Source of the DNA: Oikopleura dioica | Lineage: Eukaryota > Animalia > Chordata | DNA length: 64,000 bases | Reading direction: 5' to 3' | NCBI GenBank assembly: GCA_907165135.1 | Contig: OU015568.1 | Location: forward strand, 930,001 to 994,000 | Shown here: in pieces, positions 2,330 to 40,026 of the stretch | Layout of the letters: each line of letters opens with the position of its first letter | Numbering within the stretch: position 1 is the stretch's first letter | Position numbers and translations under genes: made by a program | Notes under the pieces: model-generated | Told to the model about the DNA's origin: nothing | The model's database searches: none | The model's input: the letters and a program-made list of their open reading frames with translations, nothing else

Positions 2330-3857
2330 TTTGTCGTCATTTCGAGGTCTTGCTTTTTTATAAAATTATTTTCAGTAGTCTATCTTGATTTGTGTTTCGC
2401 GAAGAAGGATATACTCAGTTTCTTCGTGCTGCCGATGAATTCTAGCGAAAAATCTCTGCTGGAACGGGTTTTGATGGATTTGTTGATGTCGACTGTATAT
2501 CGGCATTTCTAGAGGAATTTTAGATAATAGAAATTGAAGTTGTTTTACCGGTGATTCCAGTGTATAAGTCAGCAAAGAAGCAGCAGACTTTCTTCCGCCA
2601 AAAATTCTTCTCAAACTTGTTCGTTGGCCAATACTGAGCTTCGAAGCTTCGCATGATCCATATCTTTCGAAGAGCACCAAGAATATCTCGAATTCCTTTT
2701 CCGTTAGATTCTCAGTCGCCGAGGACTCAAATCTACAATTTTCATTGCCAAAAATTCGTCAGAAATTATCTTACATAATCGGCCGCTTTGAGATTTCGGG
2801 ACATCTTTCTGTTCTGCTCGTTTCTCGCTTTTTTCTTGAACTAATTGTTTCTTTCATTTTTTCATGAATTTCAGTCGCTTAAATTTTCGTGATAAGGGAT
2901 CAAGAATTTTGGAATACCTAGTGTGGAATAAGCTTTTTTGACATTTTCAGGAAGAGATCTGAAGTTTTTGAAGTTCTCGAATTTTTCACGATGCTGGGAA
3001 AGAAGGCATAAATCGACATTGAAATGCAGTTTGATAATAGCTTCTTGAATATCTAAATCCTTCTTTGAAGACATAGAAGAGAGTAAGGCATATTACCAGG
3101 GTTGTAAGTTATTTCAAACGGCGAAGTCTTATTTTCCACAACCAGCCCGACGATTGAGAAGTCACTTTTGAGCTCCAATTCTTTCGGATTGATGTCGAGC
3201 GGAACTCCAGTAGCTCTCAATCCTGTTTCGCGAAAAGCTGTTTGGACATCGATCAGAAAACCGAAGCGGCAGATCGACTCCTTACACAACAGTTTTGATT
3301 GACCAGTCAAAATTGGGTTTTCTTTTGTGGTACAGTCCGCACTGTAAGCCTAGAAATCATGATAGAGGTTGATGAAGTGTGTGTGTCCTGGGCTGGAGAG
3401 CCCAATTGGCTTACGCTTAGGAGTTGTCTCATCCAATTCCAAATTTGTCTCGACCATTTCGTCCGATGCTCGATTATTCCGCAATAACCATGCCTTGATT
3501 GAGAAGGAGAAATATAGCAATCTGTCGCGTTTGCTCGTGAAGGAGTTATCTAGAATTTCGCAAAATGAACAGTTTTGACGAAAGAGGCAAGAACTGACCA
3601 TTTGAGCAAGTTGCTCTCTCAGCACTTGGAGATGAAAGGCGAGCTCTGGGAAAACGCTTATTTGCGAGCTTTGGATCGGAACTATAACTTTTCTTTGACT
3701 TTTTCGATTTGGCAAAATTGGGCCCACCTGGTATTGACGTGTCCAGATTTTCGTTGTAAACTCGATGGAGGACGATTTCCGCCGCGGACAACATCGCTTG
3801 CTTGAGAATTTCGGGATGGGTTAGGTTTCGAGTGACGCGGTCGAGGAGGTTTTTCAC
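2330..3857 (-). CDS. Multi-exon gene of unknown function (approximate limits)
   Basis: Successive overlapping minus-strand ORF pieces (3546-3857, 3350-3727, 3053-3310, 2871-3074) with coding-like composition. No family motif recognised. Confidence 0.4.
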
Positions 3858-4399
3858 GCGTTTGTACTCTTTTCTTAAAAGATTTTTTAGTTTTTATTAC
3901 ATATTCGATTCAGAAAATGTTTTTGAAGCCCATTTCAAATTTTGCATCGAAAAATAATGGGGTTCAAAGATGGGATGTGCAGGAAATTGCACAATGTGCG
4001 TCAAGCGTGAAAAAGTTTATATAATATAATTTATATTATATTATATAAACGAATAGTTTATATAACGAAAGGAATTTGCCACACTAGGTTTCGTCATTTA
4101 ATTTATTTGACAGAAAGTATAGTCAGTTCGTTAATTATGAATCAAAAGGCTGGTCAAAAGGGAAGTTCAGATTAACCTCAGAGAAAAAAATAGGTCTTTG
4201 CTTGAAAATGAGATTTTTGATTATCATCACCTTTTCCATAACAATTTCAAATGCTTTTGTGAAAAGGTAGAGACTTATTTTTGAATCTTTAAAAAGATTA
4301 AACTGTTAAGGTTCCCGAACTACGCGGATGCCGAAAACCTTCATCGATTTTTCTCTAAGACGAAATCGTAGCAATTGCTACAGAACCTTTCAGTAGAAG

Positions 4400-5957
4400 A
4401 TCATCGATGATTATTTTGAAATAAAGCTTTTCAAAATCATTTCTTCAATAAATTTTCCACGAGCATAAAATCCAGAGAATTCTTGTTTTCATCGAAAATA
4501 CCTTGATGCTTGTTGAATTCCATTTTGCGCATCGCTGCAGCTGTCATCGTTCAAATTCACAGGCAAAAAAGTTGCTGTATTCGAGACGAGCTTTTCTTCC
4601 AGCTCTTCTTCATTCTTTTCCTGGCAGGAACGATGGTAAGTGACCTGATTCAATGGATTCCGAAGGGTGAAATCGATGTCCTGGCAAGTTTTTGGTACGT
4701 TTCGGAACTCGCAATAAGGATCACTAGAATCGTTCTTGAGGGGTTTTAGAGGTCGGCTTACTTTTGGCAGCACTCTGACAAGTCACAGTTCTGAACCTTG
4801 ACAGCAAGAATGCATTGATCTGTGGCGACATAAACGTATGGCATTCTCAGTGTTCCATGCTTGTCGTATCTGAAATGAATCTTCTTGATTGTCCAATCAT
4901 CCGAAGCCCATTTTTCCACCGCGTTTTTCGCCATTTTTTCAATATTATAAGCTTCGACTAATTGCCAAGGATATTCAACCTTTTCAGATGATGGGTACTT
5001 CTCAAACTTTGCCGTTTTCAAAAGAACTCCGCTGTCAGTTCCTTAAAATTGAGGGTTTGAAATCTAATGAAAGTGTGATCTAACCGATGAAGATCAGAGG
5101 AAAGTCGCCAGTCTTTTCCGAATCGACCGTTATTGAGGTAAAACCGCCGTACTCTGAAGAATCTCGAGGGGACATGACAAGTTCTCCCTCTACTGGTTGA
5201 CGAGAAAGGATCTGGAGATCATCTGTTGGGTCATTTTGTGAGCATTGAATGGCTTTAAATTTTCAAAAATAATTCAGACGATGACAATCCCAGTAATGAT
5301 TTTTATTGCTATTTCAACTTATTTAAGCAAAGCAAAAATCAAACTTATCCAAAATCTTCCAGAATTATGGTTTTTGAAAATTTTCCTAAATCTTTCTTCT
5401 CAAATCTGCAAATTGCATTTTTCTGATATTTCTTCGCCCTCGATTGAAAAATTCCAAAGACATGTCGTTCCGTTTCTACTGCATCGACGAAAATCGGAAA
5501 GTCGAAGTCCTCTTCTTTGCAATTCAATTCTCCAAAATGGAATTGATTCAAAATTTCAAAACCCGAGTGTCGGCAAATTGACGCGATCTTCGGATGCGAA
5601 TTCGCGCGAAAGAATGTTTCACGTGACTCGATGTCTTGGAGTCTCGGCACGTCGGAATACAGGAAGTGAATTTGCTCCGAATCGGCGGTTATCAATCGAA
5701 ATCGCGCGTCGATGAAAATATCGCCCCTTGCTCCCTTCGTCGAAAATGCTTCTTTTCCAAAGGCAAAGACTGAAATCGCTGGGTTGGCAGAAGACACTTC
5801 TTTTTGAAGGCCGATGGCAGCTACGCGCATTGTTGAATCGATCCATTTCATGAGAGTTGACGACTTTTTCCGGAATAATAAAAAAATGGGATGATTGGAG
5901 TTGATCAATTAGGTTTTGTTGTTCTGAGTTTTCTAGGATTAAAATGATTGATTTCAC
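4400..5957 (-). CDS. Multi-exon gene of unknown function with a Cys-containing C-terminal part (approximate limits)
   Basis: Chain of minus-strand ORFs 5345-5908, 4758-5021 and 4489-4773 separated by short AT-rich intron-like gaps. No family recognised. Confidence 0.45.
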
Positions 5958-6429
5958 CCGACAAAATGGGGCTAAACGAATACTTTGAAGTGAGTTTTTG
6001 GATTACCAATAAGATTGCTTTATTAGGCCTACCGGCAAATCAAAACCCACAAAACCCAAAATGGGGACCCCAAATTTTTTTGGTCATTTTGACCCCAAAT
6101 TTTCAGGGCTCATTTTAGGTTATTCCGGCTCCTTGAAACTTGATGGGCAAGAATTGGCAGTGGCAAATTCAGTTTCTTTTGAAACCGCTTTTGATAGATC
6201 TTCATCGAAATTCTCCAAGTCGATATTCCAAGTCTCCAATTTCGGCTGCGCAAAGTTCGAATTGCAAATTTGAAAATTGAGACCTTCATTTTCCGAATTC
6301 TTTTTCTAAAAATAGCTGGTGATTTGGCAGATCTGGCAGCAGCGGATTAATAATCATAAATTTGCGAATATATTTTTAGAGCAGGCGCGAGCGAGAAGGC
6401 CATAAACATAATTATCAAAGTCAACAATC

Positions 6430-7281
6430 AAATCATAAAAATTATCTTCTTTCAACTTTGCGGCTTACCTGGGAAATGGACGTTATGTAGTTTGAGCAAT
6501 GCTCGGTCTCGCCAAAGGCGCGTTCGCAGCTGATTTTCGCGCTCACGTGACTTTGGTTCTCGAGGCCGGAGGTGGTGCCATCGGGGAAATAGGCTTTCAC
6601 GTGAGGGCGGAAGGGGATTTCGGCGATCGTGAAGTACTCCCTAAAAAACGGAGTTAGAAGAGGGATACCCTTAAATATTCGACAAGCGATCGTTCGAAAT
6701 TGTCGATAAAACGACGAGCTATGACAAAAATAGACAATGTCTAGCAGACAAGCCCAGAAGGAGCTCTTGATACTGTAAATTAACCAAATGAGATCAGGTT
6801 TTCTAAGAATTAAAAAAAAATCTCCTTTGAAAAGAGATCCGCTAAGCCAATTTTAAACTTGAACAAAAGCCTCTTCTTTTGTGGCCCTTTTATAAATGGG
6901 ATAATATTTCCTTTTGTGGAAGTATTTAGAAAAGTTACTTTTGGTACTCACTCATGGCCGGAAATCAGAAACTCTTTGTCCTTTCCGTCGACAAAGGCCC
7001 ACGAGAAGAACCGCGATTGCGTTGCCCCGCGGCTTGTGCAGAACACGTCTTTTTCGACGATAATTCGACGGTCATCTTAAAATTCATTTGCTTTGGGCCC
7101 TCTTTCATTTGCAATCAAGGACGACATCAGGGCATATACCGCCGTCTACCCCCTTAAAACAAGACCTACCTATAGGTCGCAAATGAACTTCATTTTTCTT
7201 CGCATGACCATAAGTTTTCGATCTTCCAGCTTGACAGTTCTCCAATAGCGTTAAAACAAAAAGCCACAGAATTTTTCGCAT
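6430..7281 (-). CDS. Small secreted protein, unknown function (3' limit approximate)
   Basis: ATG 7281 gives the signal-peptide-like MRKILWLFVLTLLENCQAG. Later exons read GVDGGICPDVVLDCK, DDRRIIVEKDVFCTSRGATQSRFFSWAFVDG and EYFTIAEIPFRPHVKAYFPDG. Confidence 0.5.
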
Positions 7282-31587: not shown

Positions 31588-33488
31588 ATGAAATTGAATA
31601 TTTTTCTTCCTGCTGTTGCTTTTGCTGGCTGGAAGGGACCTGAAGGTAAAAATTTGAAAAGAAAGGGGGTCGATGATTCTTTTGATAGAGCCAGATGTTG
31701 ATGATGAAGGATTGGGGACTTCGAAAATCGTTGAATCTTGGGCAGAGACAAAATGCGGCGCGTGCAAGGAAACCTTACGGCCGCTGAGAATTATGCTTCA
31801 TATTCTTCAGGAACCAGAAAAGGTATAAATAGGTCTGCATAACGCAAGAAAATTCCGGATACCCTCCTTTCGTCAGGAAGCCGTCGGATTTTCCTGACGA
31901 ATGGAGGATGTTCTAGAAACTCGTTTTTTTGATGATTTTCCCTTGATTTATCTTATTATTATTCTTTCTAAAAAAGGGTTAGGGTTGAGTAAATTCCCAA
32001 CTATATGTTCAAACGACTTATTTTTATCTAAAATTACTCTAAAAAACGAATAAGCCACAAAATTCGTAATTTTGATATTCAATCTCTTGTAGGTTAACAT
32101 GTTCTTGGAGGTTCTAGAAACTTTCATCCTCCATTCGCCAGGAAATTGGCGGATTTTCCTGACATATGGAGGATACAAGAATTTTCCTGACGAAAAGAGG
32201 GTCACCCGAAAATTCGACTTTTTATTCAATGCTTGTATAAAGCTCATTTTAACATATATTGGGCATAAAGTATAAATGACAGGACCGGTCCAAATTTTTC
32301 TGAATATTATATTTTTGGTACTTGAAGAACATATGTTCTTCAACGTATACGTTTATGCATATTTTATAAAGAAAATGAATTTCTCGAAAGATTTCACTAC
32401 AGTAACTTGCTCACGAAATAGATCAAGAGCAAAATATAAATGCAGCTATCTTTATCTCTATTTATGGTTTTTGAGAACTATATCTAGAATCGATTTGAGT
32501 TAATTTTTGAATTCAGGACGGAAATAAATGGGACGAGAAAAAGCGCGGGCCCTGGAAAACATCAGAAACTCGACTGATCCGAATCATGGAAGAACTCTGC
32601 AAACACGGCGGAAAAGCCGACAAAGCATGCGCCGCTCTTCTCGAAGCCAACGAAGAAGCCATCGAAAAATGGTATTACGATGGAAATGATCCAGCAACTT
32701 GGATCGATGAAATTTGCGTCAAAGCCGCCGGCCACTGTTGTCCTCGAGCGGATCAGCAGGGGCCGAATTGCGAGGAATGCCCAAAAGGAAAGAATGGAAA
32801 AGTCTGCTCGGGAAATGGGAGATGCGATGGAGGAGGAGATCGAGAAATAATCGGGCAGTGCAAGTGCAATAGAATCGATGATCAAGCATTCTACGAAGGG
32901 GAGACTTGTTCTGAGTGCCCCAGCGACGATTCTTCTCTCCGAACGTTTTCATATTTCTTGTCAAATGAGGAAAAACTTGACAGTGAAGAACCAATCTGTC
33001 TCAGATGCGATAAGGTTTGTCTTAAAATTCTCCAGTAACAAGGTTCATTCATTTAAATTTTAGGCCTGTAAAGACGGTTGCTCCGCAAAAGGTCCAGAAA
33101 ACTGCAACGAATGCAGAGAAGGCTATGCCTGGCAAATCGTTGCTTCTCCTGGAGGCATGAACATTTCTAGCGACGGAGTTCTTCAGGTATACTTTGTCTA
33201 CATTTTTAATTAATTCAAATGTCCCAAAAGGGTGCGAAGAGAGCCTGCGTTTCTTTGAGCAAACCAAGAACTGTCCTTGAACAAAAAGCTGCTGCAACTG
33301 GAACGCAGAAAATCTTCGACCCGAATATCGACATCAAAGTGGCTCAAGAAATGATCAAGGCGGAATACAAAGCCAAAGAGGTTCGTTTCTTTTTAATCTA
33401 CTGCGATTTTAGCGGTCTTTTAAGGAACGTCGTCGACAAGCAGAAGCAGAGAAACTCAATGTTAATTCCAAAGATGAGCTGTGAATAA
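31588..33488 (+). CDS. CRELD: Cysteine-rich with EGF-like domains protein (DUF3456 plus EGF)
   Basis: Signal peptide, CGAC, then WKTSETRLIRIMEELC, CAALLEANEEAIEKWY, CCP...GPNCEEC and CSGNGRCDGGGDRE..GQCKC...YEGETCSEC, following the CRELD pattern. Confidence 0.88.
31846..32216. mobile_element. Degenerate MITE-like inverted repeat in the CRELD intron
   Basis: 31846-31920 and 32110-32216 are diverged reverse complements built of CCTCC(T/A)TTCGTCAGGAA subunits. Confidence 0.55.
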
Positions 33489-33700
33489 AAAATGCGTAAT
33501 TATCAACAGTTTTTCTCCAAAATAATTTCTTTCTTAACTAAAAAATTCATTGGCAGTTAAAAAATTTTAATAATTTGAAGTAAGAGAATGTAATGTGGCT
33601 AACAAGGAGTCATTTTAAAAAAAAATTATGAGAAGCTTCAGAGGGTCAGCTCCATCTTCAAATTTGAAAGACACGGAAGTCTTAATTCAGTGAAAAAAAT

Positions 33701-36430
33701 TCATTGAATTATTTTGTGATATTTTTCCTGGAACTCAGCCGTCAACGGCACCTGAGTATCAAGATTTGTTGCTAAAATCTCATCAACACCGCAATTTTTG
33801 CCGGACAAATGTAGATAATTCCAAGTTCCTGTTTCGTAAAGCATTTTCGCATTTGTGTACGGATGTCCTGGATTCGTGCAAGCTCCGTTTCCATTTTCTT
33901 TTTATGAATAAAAAAATCACATAAGCTCAAGACAACAAAATTTTATTCTTTCCTATAATGTCGATATACTCACTTAATTTTAATTCGGGCGTAGTTACAA
34001 TCTGCGTTTTAGGAGGTTCTCTATTTATAACAAGCTTGTTTGCTGAGCAATCAATCACTCCTTTTGCACAAGAGGAGAAAATTTTTTTCGCCCTTTTGAT
34101 TTCGTCTTCCATTTTCTGAATTTTTCATTTCATTTCGCTTGGAAATATGAACAAAACCTTCTGTCCAAAAGCTTCTATTTTTCGATGTAAAGATGCATTA
34201 AAATAATTATACATAAGAATGTCGGCTTTATGAAAATCTTCGAATACTGCTTGCCTATTTGAATTTAATAATTCCTTTTTGTAGTGTCTTTCGTTTTTGT
34301 TTTCGAGATAGAGATGCTCGTATTCAGCGCAGAGTAAATGTCTGAGTAGAACAATGCCCTCCCAAAAATATTCCGTGATAAGAACCAGGTCAAATTGACT
34401 GTCCAATCTCGACAGACTCTCTTTTACATATGTGATGTCGTTTATTTTGTCGAAATCCATTCCAAGTTCAAACGACTGAGGGTTACTTTTTGATGGTTAA
34501 AAATATATCAACATTAATGAGACAAAATATTACAAAATAAATTTATCCGATTCCTTACTCGATACGCAAACGGAACCGAAGAATTGTATGCTTTTGGAAG
34601 AATATCGAGAAATTTTTCAATTGGCGGATATGGTCTCTTATTGTTATCTTTCACAAAGTCTGAGAGAAAGGTCTTGAATGGTGCGCCCCAGCATGGATAT
34701 TCACAGCCATTTGAGTTTTGATAAAAATAATTGTACGTTGACCGGAAAGTTGCAAGCGGATCACGAATTGTTGTGAAAATTTTGACTCTTTCTCGGTTTG
34801 AATCGAATATCGACGGCAAATAGTCCATATTCCAACGAAAATGATACGAGATCCCTTTATTTGGAATTATTCTGCAGGAAATTAGATAAAGCCCCTACCT
34901 AGGACAGGATCATGACGTTTGTTTCCTTCCCAACAGCGTTCGTCGAATTGAGCAGGAAAACAACCTCCTTGTGGTCCCATTTGGGGTTTTTCGATCTCAT
35001 TGAAAACCCTATTTATCTTCAACCATTTGTCGATGATGCCTTTGAATGTCGTTGATGCTGTTTTATGCTTTTTCAAAAATATAACGCCATTCTGACGATG
35101 ACATTTACTTTTCCATAAACTAAGATCAGCTGTTAGCGGAATTTTACTGAAAAAATTTTTCTTCGTTTCTCCTGTAACTTCATTCTCGGCTTTTTTTCTT
35201 AGATAATTTTGCTTCTCAAATAGCGGTAAACTGTTTCCTGCCAAGAGATCGTGAATTTCATTGATTAATTGATTTCCTTTTTCTATCATCGCGTTCGTAA
35301 AATATTCAAATGATGGCTGCTTCTTTGGTCGATGAAATTTTTCGGTTTGCTTTAAATTCTTTAAAAATTGATTTTAAAACTATAAAAACATATAAATATA
35401 CTTTTTCAAGACACTTAAGTCTTCGTTCGCGATCCGGGACGATATAATATTTTCGATCCTCGATAAAATCGAGAATTTTTGCCATTTCTTCTGTCGCGTT
35501 GATTTTTAAATTTTCGTAGAAAAAAATATGGACTGGAAGATCTTGCTCTTTCTTTTTAATAATTTGTAAAATGAGAGAACGCCACCGAGTCAACATGCTA
35601 GTTCCTTGTTTTTTCCAATCATTTGCCTTGAAGACGGATTCAGATACAGTCGAAGTATGGCTCTTTCCCTTTCTTCTTTTGAATTCAGCAACAGTTGCAT
35701 CAAATGGATTGCGGATCAAGAATAAGTAACCCTTTGCAGAGGAAAGACTTTTGTCTTCAGTAGTATGAGCCTTTTGAAAAAGAGTAGATCCATAAGTCGG
35801 ATTCGTCAACTCGCCAAGAAAGCCATTCTCGTAGAGTGATCTGTCGTTGTAAATGCTTCCAGTGAAGATTCCAGTTGATTTTTCAAGGAGCATTCGTGTC
35901 CAGCTAAAATTATGAACATAAAGAATTGATAGACAAAGTGCAGGCGAAGGGTGCAAGGATGCCTCAATCATAAAGGGTGAACCACCTGCGCGATCAACTG
36001 TATAAAATTATACATGTTTATTCCTGCAGGAAATAACACAAGATGTTAAATTTAGAATGAATTTTTTCAAAGCCCTAAATGGGCTTTTTGAAGGCCCATA
36101 AGTCTTATGTTATAAATACCTATAAATACCTTATAATAATAATGTTATGGTACTTACGTGTTACCGCTTCCAGGAAATGAAACAAGCGGGAAGATATCAA
36201 ACTCGTTTTCGCTACCAATTCTTGTTGCAAGCTCACACGTGTCTTCATTGACAGCTCGCATTTCACAATCAAGAATCATTTTTTTTCTCGATTAACATTT
36301 GTATATGTGGCTGGACAATATCATTATCTTTCTGCCAATCGACATTGTCGCGAAGAAAGATTAAGACAAAGCACGTGATAAAGGTAACAAAAATAAATTT
36401 AATTATTGCGTTCGTCGACATTTTTTCCAT
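33701..36430 (-). CDS. Fusion: TM anchor, WSCD-type sulfotransferase, galactose-3-O-sulfotransferase
   Basis: WSCD motifs SFPGSGNT|WTRMLLEKSTGIFTGSIY and LIRNPFDATVAEF. GAL3ST motifs VIFLKKHKTASTTF, IRDPLATFRSTYNYF, FDLVLITEYF and YFNASLHRKIEAFG. The junction lies within one ORF (34882-35289). A +1 shift occurs in a T8 run at 36279-36286. Confidence 0.82.
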
Positions 36431-37698
36431 GTTTTTTAAAGTTAACTTCTTTTTGAATATTTTTGAGTCCTTCGTTTCTCTCTCTCTCTTTTAAATTGTG
36501 GGAATAAACAGCCACGATCGTGAACTCATAATTTCATGTAAGGAGCAGCAATTTTATCTTCATATCTTTAACTTGAGTTAGTTTCTATTTATGCATTTTC
36601 TTGAAGAACGGTTAAATTCAAGAAAAAAAAAACAAAACTGATTTCGTTTTCCTAAGAAATTTGTCAGAATTTTTCTTGACATTGTGATTTATCGATGCAT
36701 AAAGTTTGATTTTCGCACTGCCATAGCAACAATAGAGAGATGAGGATTGAAAAAAACTTTTATGATTCGGCTCCTTTGTGGCAAATGCAAATGTTTTTTT
36801 TGTTTACTCATATTCTGCCAAAATGCGACGCTTATCCTGCCCACCTTTTGCCTCTCTTTTGGAAAGCGCAAATAAAACTGTTTGCATAAAACTGCCATTA
36901 AGTTGAAATAAATTAGAAAAAAATATTTTTTGAACACTGTTTTGAGTAACGAATTGAGTAATGGTGACGACGACAAACCGGAATTTAACACGCCGACGAC
37001 AATTGCTATATAAAGGCCATATAATATTGCACATGGACTTTAACGCCATCTATTGACCAATGCCCGAAGCCGATTCTTAACCCAAACCAACACACAGCCC
37101 AAAACCTTAAATCGAACATGAACCTACCATGGAGTTGAGCTCTAAGTGGAGATAGGAGAATCTGAGCGTCTTTGGCCCCGTAAGACGCTCGATCTGTGAG
37201 CGCGCCTAATTTTGGGAGAATCCGCGCCAACCCTTGTCGGCTCTCTCATTGGCTAGACCGGTTTAACTTTCGAGATTCTGTTCTTCCGAATCTCGAGATT
37301 CTTCTAAACCGACGAGCAAGCGTTAAAGAAACTTTCTAGACTTCCCCCGACAGTGATTTGCGCGGGACACGGGGAAAGGGGGCCAGGGGCTATCTCCCCA
37401 AAGAGTAAAACTTCATGGTAGTCTCAATCACAGACCATTGAAAAAAAACAGAAGTGAAAGAAGTAAAAAAATGGGTGTTTAAAAATTTTTGGGTCATATA
37501 TGGCTTATTTGTCGTCGTAAGGTTAATCTTTATTCGTTTTCTTCTTACAAAAAAGATAACGTCATCGACAACCAGAAGCAGATAGAATGAATTTTAATTC
37601 TAGAGATGAGCTTTAAATAGTGATCAAAAAAAGGCACTACAATCTTGAATGAGTATTTTTGTACGAACAGAATAGTGAAAACAAATCGTTATAAGAAA

Positions 37699-40026
37699 TT
37701 ATTCTTCGAGGGTTTTCGTTCTCAAATATCTTTTTTTCTCGAATTTTGGTAATTCGTTATCTTCAAAAAGATCGTAAACTTCATTGATTAATTGATTTCC
37801 TTTTTCAATCATCGCGTTTGAAAAATACTCAAATGATGGCGGCGCCTTTGGACGATGAAATTTCTCAGTTTCTTTTAAACTCTGAAATAAAAGTGACAAT
37901 GATAGATATGGGCTTATGAAAATGTACTTTTTCAAGGCACTGCAATCTTCTTTCTCGATCTGGAACGGCATAATATTTTTGGCTCTCGACGAAATCAAGA
38001 ATTTTCGCCATTTCTCGGGTCGCATTGATTTTTAAGTCTTCGTAGAAAAAGATGTGCATTGGGACCTTATTTTCTTTCTTTTTGCTGATGATTTTTAACA
38101 TAAGATTGTGCCACCAGCCCAAAAATTGTGTCCCCTGTTTAATCCAATCATCTTCTTTGAAAACCGACTCAGAAACACTTGAAGTGTGGCCTTTCCCCTT
38201 TCTTCTTTTGAATTCTGCGATGACTGCATCAAACGGATTGCGGATCAGAAATAAGTATCCTTTTGCGGAGGAAATATTTTTGTCGTCGATGTTGTGAGCT
38301 TTTTGAAAGAGAGTTGTCCCGTCTGTCGGGTCGGTATATTCGCCGAATAATCCGTCTTCGTAAAGTGACTTGTCGTTGTAAATACTTCCGGTATAGATGC
38401 CGGTAGATTTTTCAAGAAGCATTCGGGTCCAACTAAGAAGCTTTTTATTTGTCATTTGCGAGAAAACCTTACGTGTTTCCACTTCCAGCGAATGAAACAA
38501 GCGGGAAAACATCGAATTCGTCTTTCCTCCCAAGTCGTGTTCCGAGGTCACAATTGTCTTCATCTGGCATTTCGAAGTCGAGTATCATTTCTTCGCCAAA
38601 TTTATCCGCGGCTAGTCGTTCAAGGACAACATTCGCGCTCCAAGTCGATGGATTCGAATAAAAGAAGAAATCGGATGTGAACGCCAGCTCTTGAGAAAGA
38701 AGAGAGAGTTGTGTATCAAAATAAGCATCAGTTAGTCGAGATTTGGCAAAGTCTGATATTTCTTGTTCTTCGATAATTTCGGCTTCGGGGTAATATTCGA
38801 CAATATGGGAAGTGAGATTTTTCAAGAAATTATAGTCGGACGGGGGGCTATTTCGGGCTCAATCAGTTGATGATTTTTTATAAAAATAAATAAACATTTA
38901 TTGAAGCCTTTTGCCTGAAAAGTAAAATTGTCTTTCCATTTATTTTCTTCATTCTTTTGACAACCCATTTTACGAAAATGGATGGATCCGCTCGTATATT
39001 CTTAATTTTTGCAACGAGACTCTTCTTGCTTTCCCCAGAATTCAGCTGAATGAAATCGTTTAGATCATATCGCCAATGAAGAGTCGCAAAATGGGTGATA
39101 TTTTTTGAGCTAAGAAATTCTTTCGAAATTTCTTGAATCTTTTTCGATCTTCTAGTGTTTCTGATAATATCGAGGATCATGTCGATAAAGTCGAAATCGT
39201 ACAGTTTGCTCGCTCGAAGACGGTTCTTTGCCAGCTCATTCTGGAGAAAGTATTAACAAGCCTTCTAACACGACGGAAACCTCACCCAATCGATTATGCC
39301 AAATGGTTGTTTGAGCATAACACAGTCAATGTTATCAAATTTCAAAAACTGTTCGGAAATTTCTCGTTGAAAATCTTCTTTTGGCCCGATAAGATCAACC
39401 TTCTCGGTGTCGTTATACGTCGAAAAATCCAAGCCGAAGTAGTTGTAAGTATGCTGGATATATCTGGTGTCTTTCCAGTTTTGATGAGTGTTGAAAATCA
39501 AATCAAAGCGGTTCTCTTTCATGATTGCTTAACTTTTTTTCGTCGAATTATTTCGTAAAAAATTAGCGCAATCCTTTCCCAAACAGCTTTCATGAACATG
39601 AGAAGCGACAGAGATTGACGAGTTTATCAACGGAATATCGAATATTTCTGATGGAGGTAAACGAAATTCGCCCTTTGAAGAAAAGTGCCGGAAAAACGGT
39701 GGGACCCCGATCTTAATAAAATTATAAAACTTGTGCTTTTTCGAGTTTTCGTTCACCTTTCGATCAAGAATCTTTGCAATGATGAGACTTTCCCTAAAGC
39801 CTTGGTACTGATTGTTTGGCCCGTAAATCAAAACAGGAATAAGGATTTTCGTATTTTTCATTTCTCTCGCAAATAATCCGCTCTCTTCATGCTCCAGCAA
39901 AAATTTAATGTGTGGTTGGACAATGTCAGCCTCTTTCCTCTGATTTAAATCGTCTCCAAGGAAGTAGAAAAAGGACCAAGTAATGAATAAAACGAAAAAA
40001 AGTTGGTAAAATATATGAATTTCCAT
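37699..40026 (-). CDS. Fusion: TM anchor, O-fucosyltransferase (POFUT/PF10250-like), WSCD-type sulfotransferase
   Basis: O-FucT-like motifs GPNNQYQGFRESLIIAKILDR..VPPF, LHWRYDLNDF and SQELAFTSDFFFYSNPSTWSANVVLER. ORF 38469-38825 runs from these directly into FPLVSFAGSGNT; ORF 37865-38563 is the WSCD domain. Confidence 0.8.

What the first reader, a model, noticed from the sequence alone, without database searches (positions are those of the whole stretch)
33701..36430. Tandem double sulfotransferase: WSCD-type domain followed by a Gal-3-O-sulfotransferase
ORF 34882-35289 begins with the WSCD C-terminal helix MIEKGNQLINE. In the neighbouring paralog the equivalent segment stops at RTKTLEE*; here it continues into CHRQNGVIFLKKHKTAST of a GAL3ST domain. 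Two different PAPS-dependent enzymes on one chain could sulfate two positions of one glycan (inference).
Basis: partly seen in the sequence, partly recalled or inferred. Interest (0 to 1): 0.75.

Follow-up and report, generated by a model that had tools for sequence, protein, structure and literature searches.

The report
Two different sulfotransferases fused in one gene
In the planktonic tunicate Oikopleura dioica, one short-intron gene reads without a stop from a WSCD-type sulfotransferase into a galactose-3-O-sulfotransferase-type enzyme; other gene copies and other larvaceans keep the same fusion, so it looks like a real, undescribed two-enzyme Golgi protein, though its expression was not shown.

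Summary
On the minus strand, 36430-33701 is one eight-exon gene with GT-AG introns of 42-254 nt. Exon 35358-34899 carries the last WSCD helix, about seven linker residues and the GAL3ST PAPS loop in one open frame.

The genome is Oikopleura dioica OKI2018_I69 or a very near relative. Two more paralogs keep the same junction in frame. One of them (L004) is a single intronless 672-codon ORF: anchor, WSCD, GAL3ST. Three metagenome contigs, read as other larvaceans, are fused too. In a search of 1.84 billion protein representatives, only that larvacean group joined the two families among the 150 best hits.

An AlphaFold model of the intronless paralog shows two separate sulfotransferase folds. dN/dS on this copy's branch is about 0.04-0.26, with dS saturated.

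Caveats:
- No RNA read lay on the locus, which is no test.
- The membrane-anchor exon is one base out of frame with the rest, at an A8 run in a Nanopore-based assembly. This is either an assembly error or a recent lesion.

That the protein sulfates two positions of one glycan remains inference. Earlier notes of this scan described the related fucosyltransferase-like/WSCD fusions next door and at 5.12 Mb. The WSCD-GAL3ST form is new here.

The parts
36281..36430 (-). Exon A: start codon and a hydrophobic N-terminal stretch (MEKMSTNAIIKFIFVTFITCFVLIFL...DIVQPHIQMLIEKK), read as the signal anchor. It is homologous to the first 50 residues of the neighbour gene.
   Evidence: 38% identity to residues 1-50 of the neighbour's first exon. 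As assembled, this frame runs into TGA at 36269-36271. No transmembrane predictor was run; the anchor is read from the sequence.
36279..36286 (-). A8 run at the join of exon A and exon B. It puts the anchor exon one base out of frame with ATG 36279 and all downstream exons. With A7 the reading would be ...LIEKKMILDCEM...
   Evidence: read directly. The assembly is Nanopore-based and polished with Pilon (PMC8008620). No GT-AG intron of plausible length restores the frame (hand check).
36158..36279 (-). Exon B: stem plus the WSCD 5'-PSB PAPS loop (..EFDIFPLVSFPGSGNT, completed by W from exon C). The donor is AC|GTAAGT.
   Evidence: 63-65% identity to the neighbour's stem exon.
35402..35903 (-). 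Exon C: core of the WSCD-type sulfotransferase, including QKAH and the 3'-PB motif LIRNPFDATVAEF (about 35681-35719).
   Evidence: Pfam PF00685, 31.9 bits. It is 76% identical to the neighbour gene. Branch dN/dS is about 0.09.
34899..35358 (-). Exon D, the junction exon. It holds the WSCD C-terminal helix (35179-35358), a linker of about 7 residues, VTGETKK (35158-35178), and the GAL3ST N-terminus with the 5'-PSB motif FLKKHKTASTT (35047-35079). There is no stop and no in-frame ATG between the domains.
   Evidence: (residues 2-60 match WSCD-only paralogs, residues 68-153 match GAL3ST-only paralogs, and residues 6-153 and 7-153 match the two other fused paralogs).
35191..35197 (-). A7 run just where homology to the neighbour ends. 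A miscount here would end the WSCD part (A8 gives YLRKKSRE*) and leave the GAL3ST part without a start codon.
   Evidence: Against a miscount: three other linker sequences without this run are also open or restored in frame.
34559..34854 (-). Exon E: GAL3ST part with the 3'-PB motif TTIRDPLATFRS (34739-34774). The D/E splice reproduces DPV(L/I)GI(S/T)YHFRWN, which is contiguous in paralog L002.
   Evidence: 73% identity to L013.
34158..34475 (-). Exon F: GAL3ST core (SFELGMDFD...EYFWEGIVLLRHLLC...).
   Evidence: Pfam PF06990, 55.6 bits, profile positions 211-317. It is 75-76% identical to L013 and L019.
33974..34115 (-). Exon G: C-terminal extension shared with the stand-alone O. dioica GAL3ST protein P0005.
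33701..33897 (-). Exon H: conserved cysteine-containing tail (..GACTNPGHPYTNAKMLYETGTWNY..) and the TGA stop at 33701-33703.
   Evidence: 70-76% identity to L013 and L019.

Best explanation
This is a real protein-coding gene of Oikopleura dioica. Its product is a single type II (N-terminally anchored) Golgi-type chain carrying two complete, different PAPS-dependent carbohydrate sulfotransferase domains. The first is a WSCD-type domain (Sulfotransfer_1 superfamily). The second is a GAL3ST-type domain, joined to the first by about 7 residues inside one exon.

The GAL3ST part has no start codon and no membrane anchor of its own, so it can only be made and delivered to the Golgi lumen as part of the fused chain. 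This architecture is a larvacean family trait. Anchor-WSCD-GAL3ST occurs three times in this genome and in three metagenome contigs that I read as other larvaceans.

This copy derives from a longer ancestor of the neighbour's type. An internal deletion removed the module that earlier notes call O-fucosyltransferase-like.

Inferred, not shown: both domains are active, and tethering lets them sulfate two sites of the same glycan in one pass, probably on secreted house or matrix glycoconjugates.
For: - Eight exons have canonical GT-AG introns, compatible phases and no internal stop.
- The junction exon matches WSCD-only paralogs over residues 2-60 and GAL3ST-only paralogs over residues 68-153. 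It matches two further paralogs across both parts.
- L004 is one uninterrupted 672-codon ORF with PF00685 (32.1 bits) and PF06990 (93.5 bits), both above their cut-offs.
- Contigs L011, L012 and L029, about 60-67% identical to L004, keep the fusion. L012 shows the N-terminal hydrophobic stretch and the PSB exon. In L029 a 40-nt GT-AG intron inside the linker restores the frame.
- These fused genes form one clade in the WSCD tree (ultrafast bootstrap/SH-aLRT 100/99) and in two of the three GAL3ST exon trees (100/99, 99/98). The exon F tree is unresolved.
- The AlphaFold model of L004 has mean pLDDT 79.9. Residues 48-284 match NDST1, 3-OST, Teg12 and SULT folds (Z 11-13). Residues 308-621 match heparan sulfate 2-OST and 6-OST folds (Z 14.5-16).
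- All consensus PAPS-motif positions are present in this copy.
- Branch dN/dS for this copy is about 0.09 (WSCD core), 0.26 (junction helix) and 0.04-0.08 (GAL3ST exons).
- Stand-alone O. dioica GAL3ST proteins (P0004, P0005, P0210, P0211) have their own N-terminal hydrophobic stretch, which this GAL3ST part lacks.
Against: - No transcript evidence. Four RNA runs labelled with the species gave 0-2 reads over 5.9 kb. The tool calls this no test, and O. dioica lineages are very divergent.
- The anchor exon is one base out of frame at an A8 run. If that is real, the product starts at M36279 without an anchor and the copy may be a fresh pseudogene.
- dS is saturated (above 1), so the dN/dS values are rough and average over a long history.
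- A7 and A8 homopolymers sit at both critical joins of a Nanopore-based assembly.
- No public annotated protein for this gene could be retrieved to compare models.
- Activity and acceptor of both domains are untested.
Confidence: 0.7

Rival explanations
1. This copy is a recently disabled duplicate, a young pseudogene. The deletion that removed the middle module left the anchor exon out of frame, so no Golgi-targeted protein is made here. The fused architecture would still be real in the paralogs.
For: There is a one-base frame clash at the A8 run 36279-36286, and no intron rescues it. No RNA reads were laid. The sister paralog L002/L013 also carries a one-base clash, at an A6 run. This is either decay in the family or the same kind of assembly error.
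Against: About 678 codons downstream, in seven exons, have no stop. All splice sites are canonical, all PAPS motifs are intact and branch dN/dS is about 0.04-0.26. [quoted passage not shown]
Confidence: 0.2
2. These are two separate genes, a WSCD gene followed by a GAL3ST gene, perhaps in an operon with trans-splicing at the TTTTTTCAG inside the exon. They would read as one because of a miscounted A7 run at 35191-35197.
For: With A8 the WSCD frame would end YLRKKSRE*, close to where the neighbour ends (YLRTKTLEE*). A splice-acceptor-like TTTTTTCAG lies 5 nt before KIPLTADL. That O. dioica has operons and trans-splicing is my own recollection; I checked no paper for it here.
Against: After the junction, the first in-frame ATG lies downstream of the GAL3ST 5'-PSB loop. 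The GAL3ST part also has no hydrophobic anchor, unlike the stand-alone paralogs. The frame stays open across quite different linker sequences in L002, L004, L011 and L012, and is restored by an intron in L029. The stand-alone gene L019 has no intron at that position, so the CAG is not an inherited acceptor.
Confidence: 0.07
3. It is a gene-model or chance artefact: unrelated ORFs that merely look continuous.
For: The exon model was built by hand. The Pfam hit on the junction exon is below the cut-off (17.3 bits).
Against: Exon-wise matches to paralogs reach E 1e-37 to 1e-61 across the junction. The splice junctions reproduce sequence that is contiguous in intronless paralogs.
Confidence: 0.03

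Closest known systems
Vertebrate WSCD1/WSCD2 (sialate:O-sulfotransferases 1 and 2; PMC9304399)
   Same: The N-terminal catalytic domain is their sequence relative: 28-40% identity over the sulfotransferase part and E 1e-22 to 1e-31 with the paralog L004. It has the same 5'-PSB (PGSGNTW) and 3'-PB (RNPxDA) motifs and the same type II layout, with the catalytic part after an N-terminal anchor.
   Different: It has no WSC domains; PF01822 was not found on any exon. A second sulfotransferase is attached at the C-terminus. The genome gave no hit to the CMP-sialate synthetase family, so sialic acid may not be the acceptor here.
GAL3ST family (Pfam PF06990; GAL3ST1/cerebroside sulfotransferase and GAL3ST2-4)
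   Same: The C-terminal half matches PF06990. It keeps the family's KHKxxS and RDPxxxFxS motifs. It is 57-73% identical, exon by exon, to the stand-alone O. dioica GAL3ST-type protein P0005 (CAG5112934.1).
   Different: It lacks its own start codon and membrane anchor and is fed from the WSCD reading frame. Galactose-3-O specificity is only the family name and was not tested.
NDST1-4 (heparan sulfate N-deacetylase/N-sulfotransferase)
   Same: It is also a single type II Golgi chain that carries two catalytic domains acting in succession on one glycan. The WSCD-type domain of L004 superposes on the NDST1 sulfotransferase domain (Z 13.3, 214 residues).
   Different: NDST pairs a deacetylase with one sulfotransferase. 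Here both domains are sulfotransferases of different families.
O. dioica paralogs that join an O-fucosyltransferase-like module to a WSCD domain
   Same: They have the same WSCD module, the same anchor exon and the same gene family. The neighbour gene at 37699-40026 is 76% identical in the WSCD core.
   Different: Those genes stop after the WSCD helix. This gene has lost the middle module and carries GAL3ST instead. Paralog L013 appears to carry all three modules.
Homo-tandem sulfotransferases in metagenomic proteins (P0084, P0118, P0128, P0175: two or three PF06990 stretches; P0136: two PF00685 stretches)
   Same: They have more than one sulfotransferase domain on one predicted chain.
   Different: Those repeat one family. 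Among the 150 best hits, only the larvacean group joins the WSCD and GAL3ST types.

Membership tests
WSCD-type sulfotransferase (WSCD1/2 clade, Sulfotransfer_1 superfamily) | Sequence membership: significant similarity to WSCD1/2 catalytic domains and a Pfam Sulfotransfer_1 hit | tested here: met
   PF00685 scores 31.9 bits (cut-off 22) on exon C. The paralog L004 hits WSCD2/sialate:O-sulfotransferase 2 proteins at E 1e-22 to 1e-31.
WSCD-type sulfotransferase (WSCD1/2 clade, Sulfotransfer_1 superfamily) | 5'-PSB and 3'-PB PAPS-binding motifs (PMC9304399) | tested here: met
   SFPGSGNT|W spans exons B/C and LIRNPFDATVAEF lies in exon C. They match the family consensus PGSGNTW ... RNPxxA.
WSCD-type sulfotransferase (WSCD1/2 clade, Sulfotransfer_1 superfamily) | WSC (PF01822) domains upstream of the catalytic domain | tested here: not met
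   No PF01822 hit on any exon, nor on L004. Vertebrate and ascidian relatives carry it. So this is a member of the catalytic clade but not of the WSC-domain architecture.
WSCD-type sulfotransferase (WSCD1/2 clade, Sulfotransfer_1 superfamily) | Sialate 8-O-sulfotransferase activity | not testable with these tools
   Indirect only: no PF02348 (CMP-sialate synthetase family) hit in the genome, with a working control. There was also no GT29 hit, but that control was silent.
WSCD-type sulfotransferase (WSCD1/2 clade, Sulfotransfer_1 superfamily) | Type II membrane topology (N-terminal anchor) | tested here: inconclusive
   A hydrophobic anchor exon is present (36281-36430) but one base out of frame at the A8 run. 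It is in frame in L004 and L012.
GAL3ST family (PF06990) | Pfam Gal-3-O_sulfotr hit above the gathering score | tested here: met
   Exon F scores 55.6 bits (cut-off 27). The junction exon scores 17.3 bits, which is below the cut-off. L004 scores 93.5 bits over profile positions 61-348.
GAL3ST family (PF06990) | Conserved PAPS motifs (KHKxxS ... RDPxxxFxS) | tested here: met
   FLKKHKTASTT lies in exon D and TTIRDPLATFRS in exon E, against the alignment consensus.
GAL3ST family (PF06990) | Own N-terminal signal anchor (stand-alone type II protein) | tested here: not met
   There is no ATG and no hydrophobic stretch between the WSCD helix and the PSB loop. The stand-alone proteins P0004, P0005, P0210 and P0211 have one.
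GAL3ST family (PF06990) | Galactose 3-O-sulfation activity | not testable with these tools
Single-chain WSCD-GAL3ST fusion (larvacean group defined here) | Both domains in one reading frame, in the order anchor-WSCD-GAL3ST | tested here: met
   Window exon D, L004, L002, L011 and L012, and L029 through a 40-nt intron.
Single-chain WSCD-GAL3ST fusion (larvacean group defined here) | One mRNA spanning both domains | tested here: inconclusive
   Read laying on four RNA runs laid 0-2 reads, which is no test.

The most novel reading that the evidence does not exclude
Larvaceans have evolved a modular family of single-chain, multi-enzyme Golgi proteins. An anchor exon is followed by interchangeable modules: a fucosyltransferase-like module, a WSCD sulfotransferase and a GAL3ST sulfotransferase. 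In one paralog, L013, all three are present. These chains would act as small assembly lines making multiply sulfated glycans for the secreted house. The WSCD module would have been re-targeted from sialic acid to another sugar, because the genome seems to lack CMP-sialate synthesis.
Probability: 0.3. Interest if true: 0.7.

Novelty: new variant of a known kind. Interest (0 to 1): 0.55.

Why it matters
Golgi sulfotransferases are almost always separate type II proteins, and how cells coordinate several sulfations on one glycan is an open practical question. A natural chain that tethers two different carbohydrate sulfotransferases, and in a sister gene perhaps a glycosyltransferase-like module as well, would be a ready-made case of enzyme coupling. 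It is conserved among larvaceans and under purifying selection. It also points to sulfated glycans as a component of the larvacean house or matrix. A 2026 single-cell preprint (10.64898/2026.03.31.715263) reports strong expression of wscd1-like and heparan sulfotransferase genes in giant oikoplastic cells. Finally, it gives a compact construct for making doubly sulfated glycans in vitro. If this copy proves to be a pseudogene, the intronless paralog L004 carries the same interest.

Tried and rejected
- RNA evidence. The look-up of sequencing runs listed no run that holds the stretch. Read laying on three oligo-dT runs and one single-cell run gave 0-2 reads over 33500-39450. This is no test and is not evidence of silence.
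- Independent contigs to check the homopolymers. Exact look-ups of the 135-aa and 221-aa ORF products found nothing. The exact L004 product is not in the protein collection.
- Public annotation of this gene. Two word searches returned only stand-alone O. dioica GAL3ST proteins and the metagenome fusions.
- An intron that would put the anchor exon in frame. I found none of plausible length by hand.
- The idea that TTTTTTCAG before KIPLTADL is an inherited acceptor. Rejected, because the stand-alone gene L019 has that stretch inside one exon.
- Single or multiple origin of the fusion. The exon-wise trees are too poorly resolved, so the question is left open.
- PDB sequence search found no relative at E 0.01 or better. 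Alignment A3 (106 rows) misaligned the GAL3ST-only rows, so the smaller A2 was used for folding.
- Pfam on single exons did not recognise the neighbour's so-called O-fucosyltransferase-like exons. I use that name only as the earlier notes' reading.
- A literature search for double, tandem or bifunctional sulfotransferases found nothing relevant.
- The joined (spliced) protein of this gene was never built, searched or folded. Exons were handled one by one, by reference, and the intronless paralog L004 stood in for the whole chain.
Full report
**What is there**

The window has about 38% G+C and many short ORFs joined by GT-AG introns of about 42-44 nt, so it is eukaryotic. The assembly has 64.28 Mb in 19 contigs. 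Protein P0005 (CAG5112934.1, Oidioi.mRNA.OKI2018_I69.chr2.g7097) matches one of its loci at 99-100% over three of its four matched stretches; the fourth runs through introns. The genome is therefore Oikopleura dioica OKI2018_I69 or something very near it. The window lies on the 17.09-Mb scaffold.

On the minus strand I read this gene model:
- exon A, 36430-36281: ATG and a hydrophobic anchor
- exon B, 36279-36158
- exon C, 35903-35402
- exon D, 35358-34899
- exon E, 34854-34559
- exon F, 34475-34158
- exon G, 34115-33974
- exon H, 33897-33701: ends in TGA

The introns are 254, 43, 44, 83, 42 and 76 nt long, and all are GT-AG. The exon phases fit: the split codons are AC|C, G|GG and A|AA. Each exon translates without a stop. 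From ATG 36279 to the stop this is 678 codons.

I did not build, search or fold the joined protein. Every search used single exons by reference.

**The observation**

Exon D reads NLKQTEKFHRPKKQPSFEYFTNAMIEKGNQLINE...YLRKKAENE-VTGETKK-NFFSKIPLTADLSLWKSKCHRQNGVIFLKKHKTASTT.... Its residues 2-60 match paralogs that hold only the WSCD part. One of these is the neighbour gene, which ends ...YLRTKTLEE*. Residues 68-153 match paralogs that hold only the GAL3ST part. The unmatched linker is therefore about seven residues.

Pfam gives these hits:
- Sulfotransfer_1 on exon C, 31.9 bits
- Gal-3-O_sulfotr on exon F, 55.6 bits
- Gal-3-O_sulfotr on exon D, 17.3 bits, which is weak and below the cut-off

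The only refinement is that the ORF's ATG is internal to a longer exon.

**Is the fusion real?**

The strongest evidence comes from relatives.
- Two other loci in the same genome match exon D across the junction. L004 is one uninterrupted 672-codon ORF with a hydrophobic N-terminal stretch, the PGSGNTW loop, the WSCD core, a linker and the whole GAL3ST domain. Both Pfam families score above their cut-offs on it.
- L002/L013 has a 338-codon ORF running from MIEKGNQYINE into GAL3ST.
- Three metagenome contigs, L011, L012 and L029, are about 60-67% identical to L004 and about 80-85% identical to each other. I read them as other larvaceans, but their source organism is not recorded. All three carry the same fusion. 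L012 shows the N-terminal hydrophobic stretch and the PSB exon followed by one short intron. In L029 the two halves are in different frames, but a 40-nt GT...CAG intron in the linker restores the frame exactly. That makes sense only if both halves lie on one mRNA.
- L004 and these contigs form one clade in the WSCD tree and in two of the three GAL3ST exon trees, with support 99-100. The exon F tree is unresolved. The two halves therefore seem to have been inherited together.
- The linkers differ in sequence and length, yet stay open or are restored by splicing.
- The GAL3ST half of the window gene has no ATG before its PAPS loop and no anchor. The stand-alone O. dioica GAL3ST proteins have their own N-terminal hydrophobic stretch.

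Together this argues against two separate genes and against a miscounted A7 run at 35191-35197 as the source of the fusion.

**Fold and motifs**

An AlphaFold model of L004 has mean pLDDT 79.9 and shows two separate domains:
- Residues 48-284 superpose on the NDST1 sulfotransferase domain, 3-OSTs, Teg12/StaL and cytosolic SULTs (Z 11-13).
- Residues 308-621 superpose on heparan sulfate 2-OST and 6-OST (Z 14.5-16).

No PDB chain is a sequence relative. The window gene keeps the expected motifs of both halves, against the alignment consensuses:
- WSCD half: SFPGSGNTW, QKAH and RNPFDATVAE
- GAL3ST half: FLKKHKTASTT, GGCFPA, YHFRWN and TIRDPLATFRS

**Selection**

Pairwise and three-point Nei-Gojobori estimates give these branch dN/dS values for this copy:
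- about 0.09 for the WSCD core
- about 0.26 for the junction helix
- about 0.04-0.08 for GAL3ST exons D2, E and F

dS is saturated (about 1-2 or more), so these are rough values. They do show an old duplicate that has been kept under constraint in both halves.

**History**

Exon A is homologous to residues 1-50 of the neighbour's first exon. Exon B is homologous to the end of the neighbour's stem exon. This gene therefore looks like a neighbour-type gene that lost its middle module. Earlier notes call that module O-fucosyltransferase-like, but Pfam does not recognise it exon by exon.

Compared with the neighbour, this gene has about 1.7 kb, the GAL3ST part, where the neighbour has 91 nt. Homology resumes in the 3' flank. 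Paralog L013 has neighbour-type exons, then WSCD, then GAL3ST in a row on one strand. That suggests a three-module ancestor and differential loss. The trees cannot decide between one fusion event and several.

**Caveats for this copy**

- The anchor exon and ATG 36279 are one base out of frame at an A8 run (36279-36286). I found no intron that mends this.
- L002 has a similar one-base clash at an A6 run.
- The assembly is Canu/Racon Nanopore, polished with Pilon. Its authors note that homopolymers were hard to resolve (PMC8008620). Real indels also favour such runs, so I cannot tell an assembly error from a lesion.
- RNA evidence is lacking. No run held the stretch, and four RNA runs of the species label gave 0-2 reads over 5.9 kb. 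This is no test.

**Distribution and novelty**

A phmmer search of 1.84 billion representatives with L004 found 3432 relatives. Among the best 150, only P0002, which belongs to the larvacean group, spans both domains. The long multi-stretch hits that I checked are homo-tandems, either GAL3ST-GAL3ST or Sulfotransfer_1-Sulfotransfer_1. A true hetero-fusion should rank high because the scores of its two domains add, but only 150 rows are visible. Literature searches found no double or bifunctional carbohydrate sulfotransferase of this kind.

WSCD1/2 are Golgi type II sialate 8-O-sulfotransferases with 5'-PSB and 3'-PB motifs (PMC9304399). A 2026 preprint reports wscd1-like and heparan sulfotransferase transcripts enriched in giant oikoplastic cells of O. 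dioica (10.64898/2026.03.31.715263). The genome gave no hit to the CMP-sialate synthetase family, with a working control. It also gave no GT29 hit, but that control was silent. So the WSCD half may act on something other than sialic acid. This is suggestive only.

**Verdict**

The finding is a real and apparently undescribed domain architecture: a WSCD-type sulfotransferase fused to a GAL3ST-type sulfotransferase, specific so far to larvaceans. This locus is one of three copies in the genome. Whether this copy is expressed with its anchor, and what the two domains sulfate, remain open. Earlier notes of this scan had described the sister architecture (fucosyltransferase-like plus WSCD) on neighbouring and distant DNA of the same genome. 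The WSCD-GAL3ST form, its orthologs and the apparent three-module paralog are added here.

Noticed in passing
L013 (G000:C1:336000-343500, + strand): 1642-2898, 2959-3261, 4178-5245, 5282-6633: This paralog appears to carry three modules in one gene: neighbour-type anchor and 'fucosyltransferase-like' exons, then WSCD, then GAL3ST. It has a one-base frame clash at an A6 run just before MIEKGNQ (L002:1517-1522).
   Followed up: partly
window 34476-34558 (minus strand intron between exons E and F): The intron begins GTAAGG and ends AGTAACCCTCAG. Its two ends encode V..SNPQ of the motif RVSNPQSFELG, which is coding in the intronless paralogs L002 and L004. This looks like an intron gained by insertion into coding sequence, with loss of five residues. 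The stand-alone gene L019/P0005 shows the same R|SFELG join.
   Followed up: partly
L029:2336-2375 and the equivalent stretch of L011/L012: In one metagenome ortholog a 40-nt GT..AG intron sits in the inter-domain linker. In the two others the similar stretch also starts with GT and ends with CAG but stays open when read through (its length was not counted), so it may be an optional or retained intron.
   Followed up: no
whole genome G000: There is no hit to the CMP-sialate synthetase family PF02348 (the control rang in 11 of 14 genomes) and none to sialyltransferase GT29 (that control was silent). About 20 WSCD-type loci and at least 35 GAL3ST-type loci are present. This looks like a large expansion of both sulfotransferase families without an evident sialic-acid pathway.
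   Followed up: partly
window 33426-33487 and 37558-37619: The 3' end of the convergent plus-strand gene (ORF ending at 33488) is duplicated, at 82% identity, downstream of the neighbour gene. The old tandem duplication therefore took a piece of that gene along.
   Followed up: no
window 32586-33488 (+ strand): ORFs here are rich in cysteine (..CPKGKNGKVCSGNGRCDGGG..), like an EGF/laminin-type secreted protein. The gene is convergent with the fusion gene.
   Followed up: no
proteins P0084, P0118, P0128, P0175, P0136 (public metagenome/genome proteins): These are predicted chains with two or three copies of the same sulfotransferase family, PF06990 or PF00685. Their origin and reality were not examined.
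   Followed up: no
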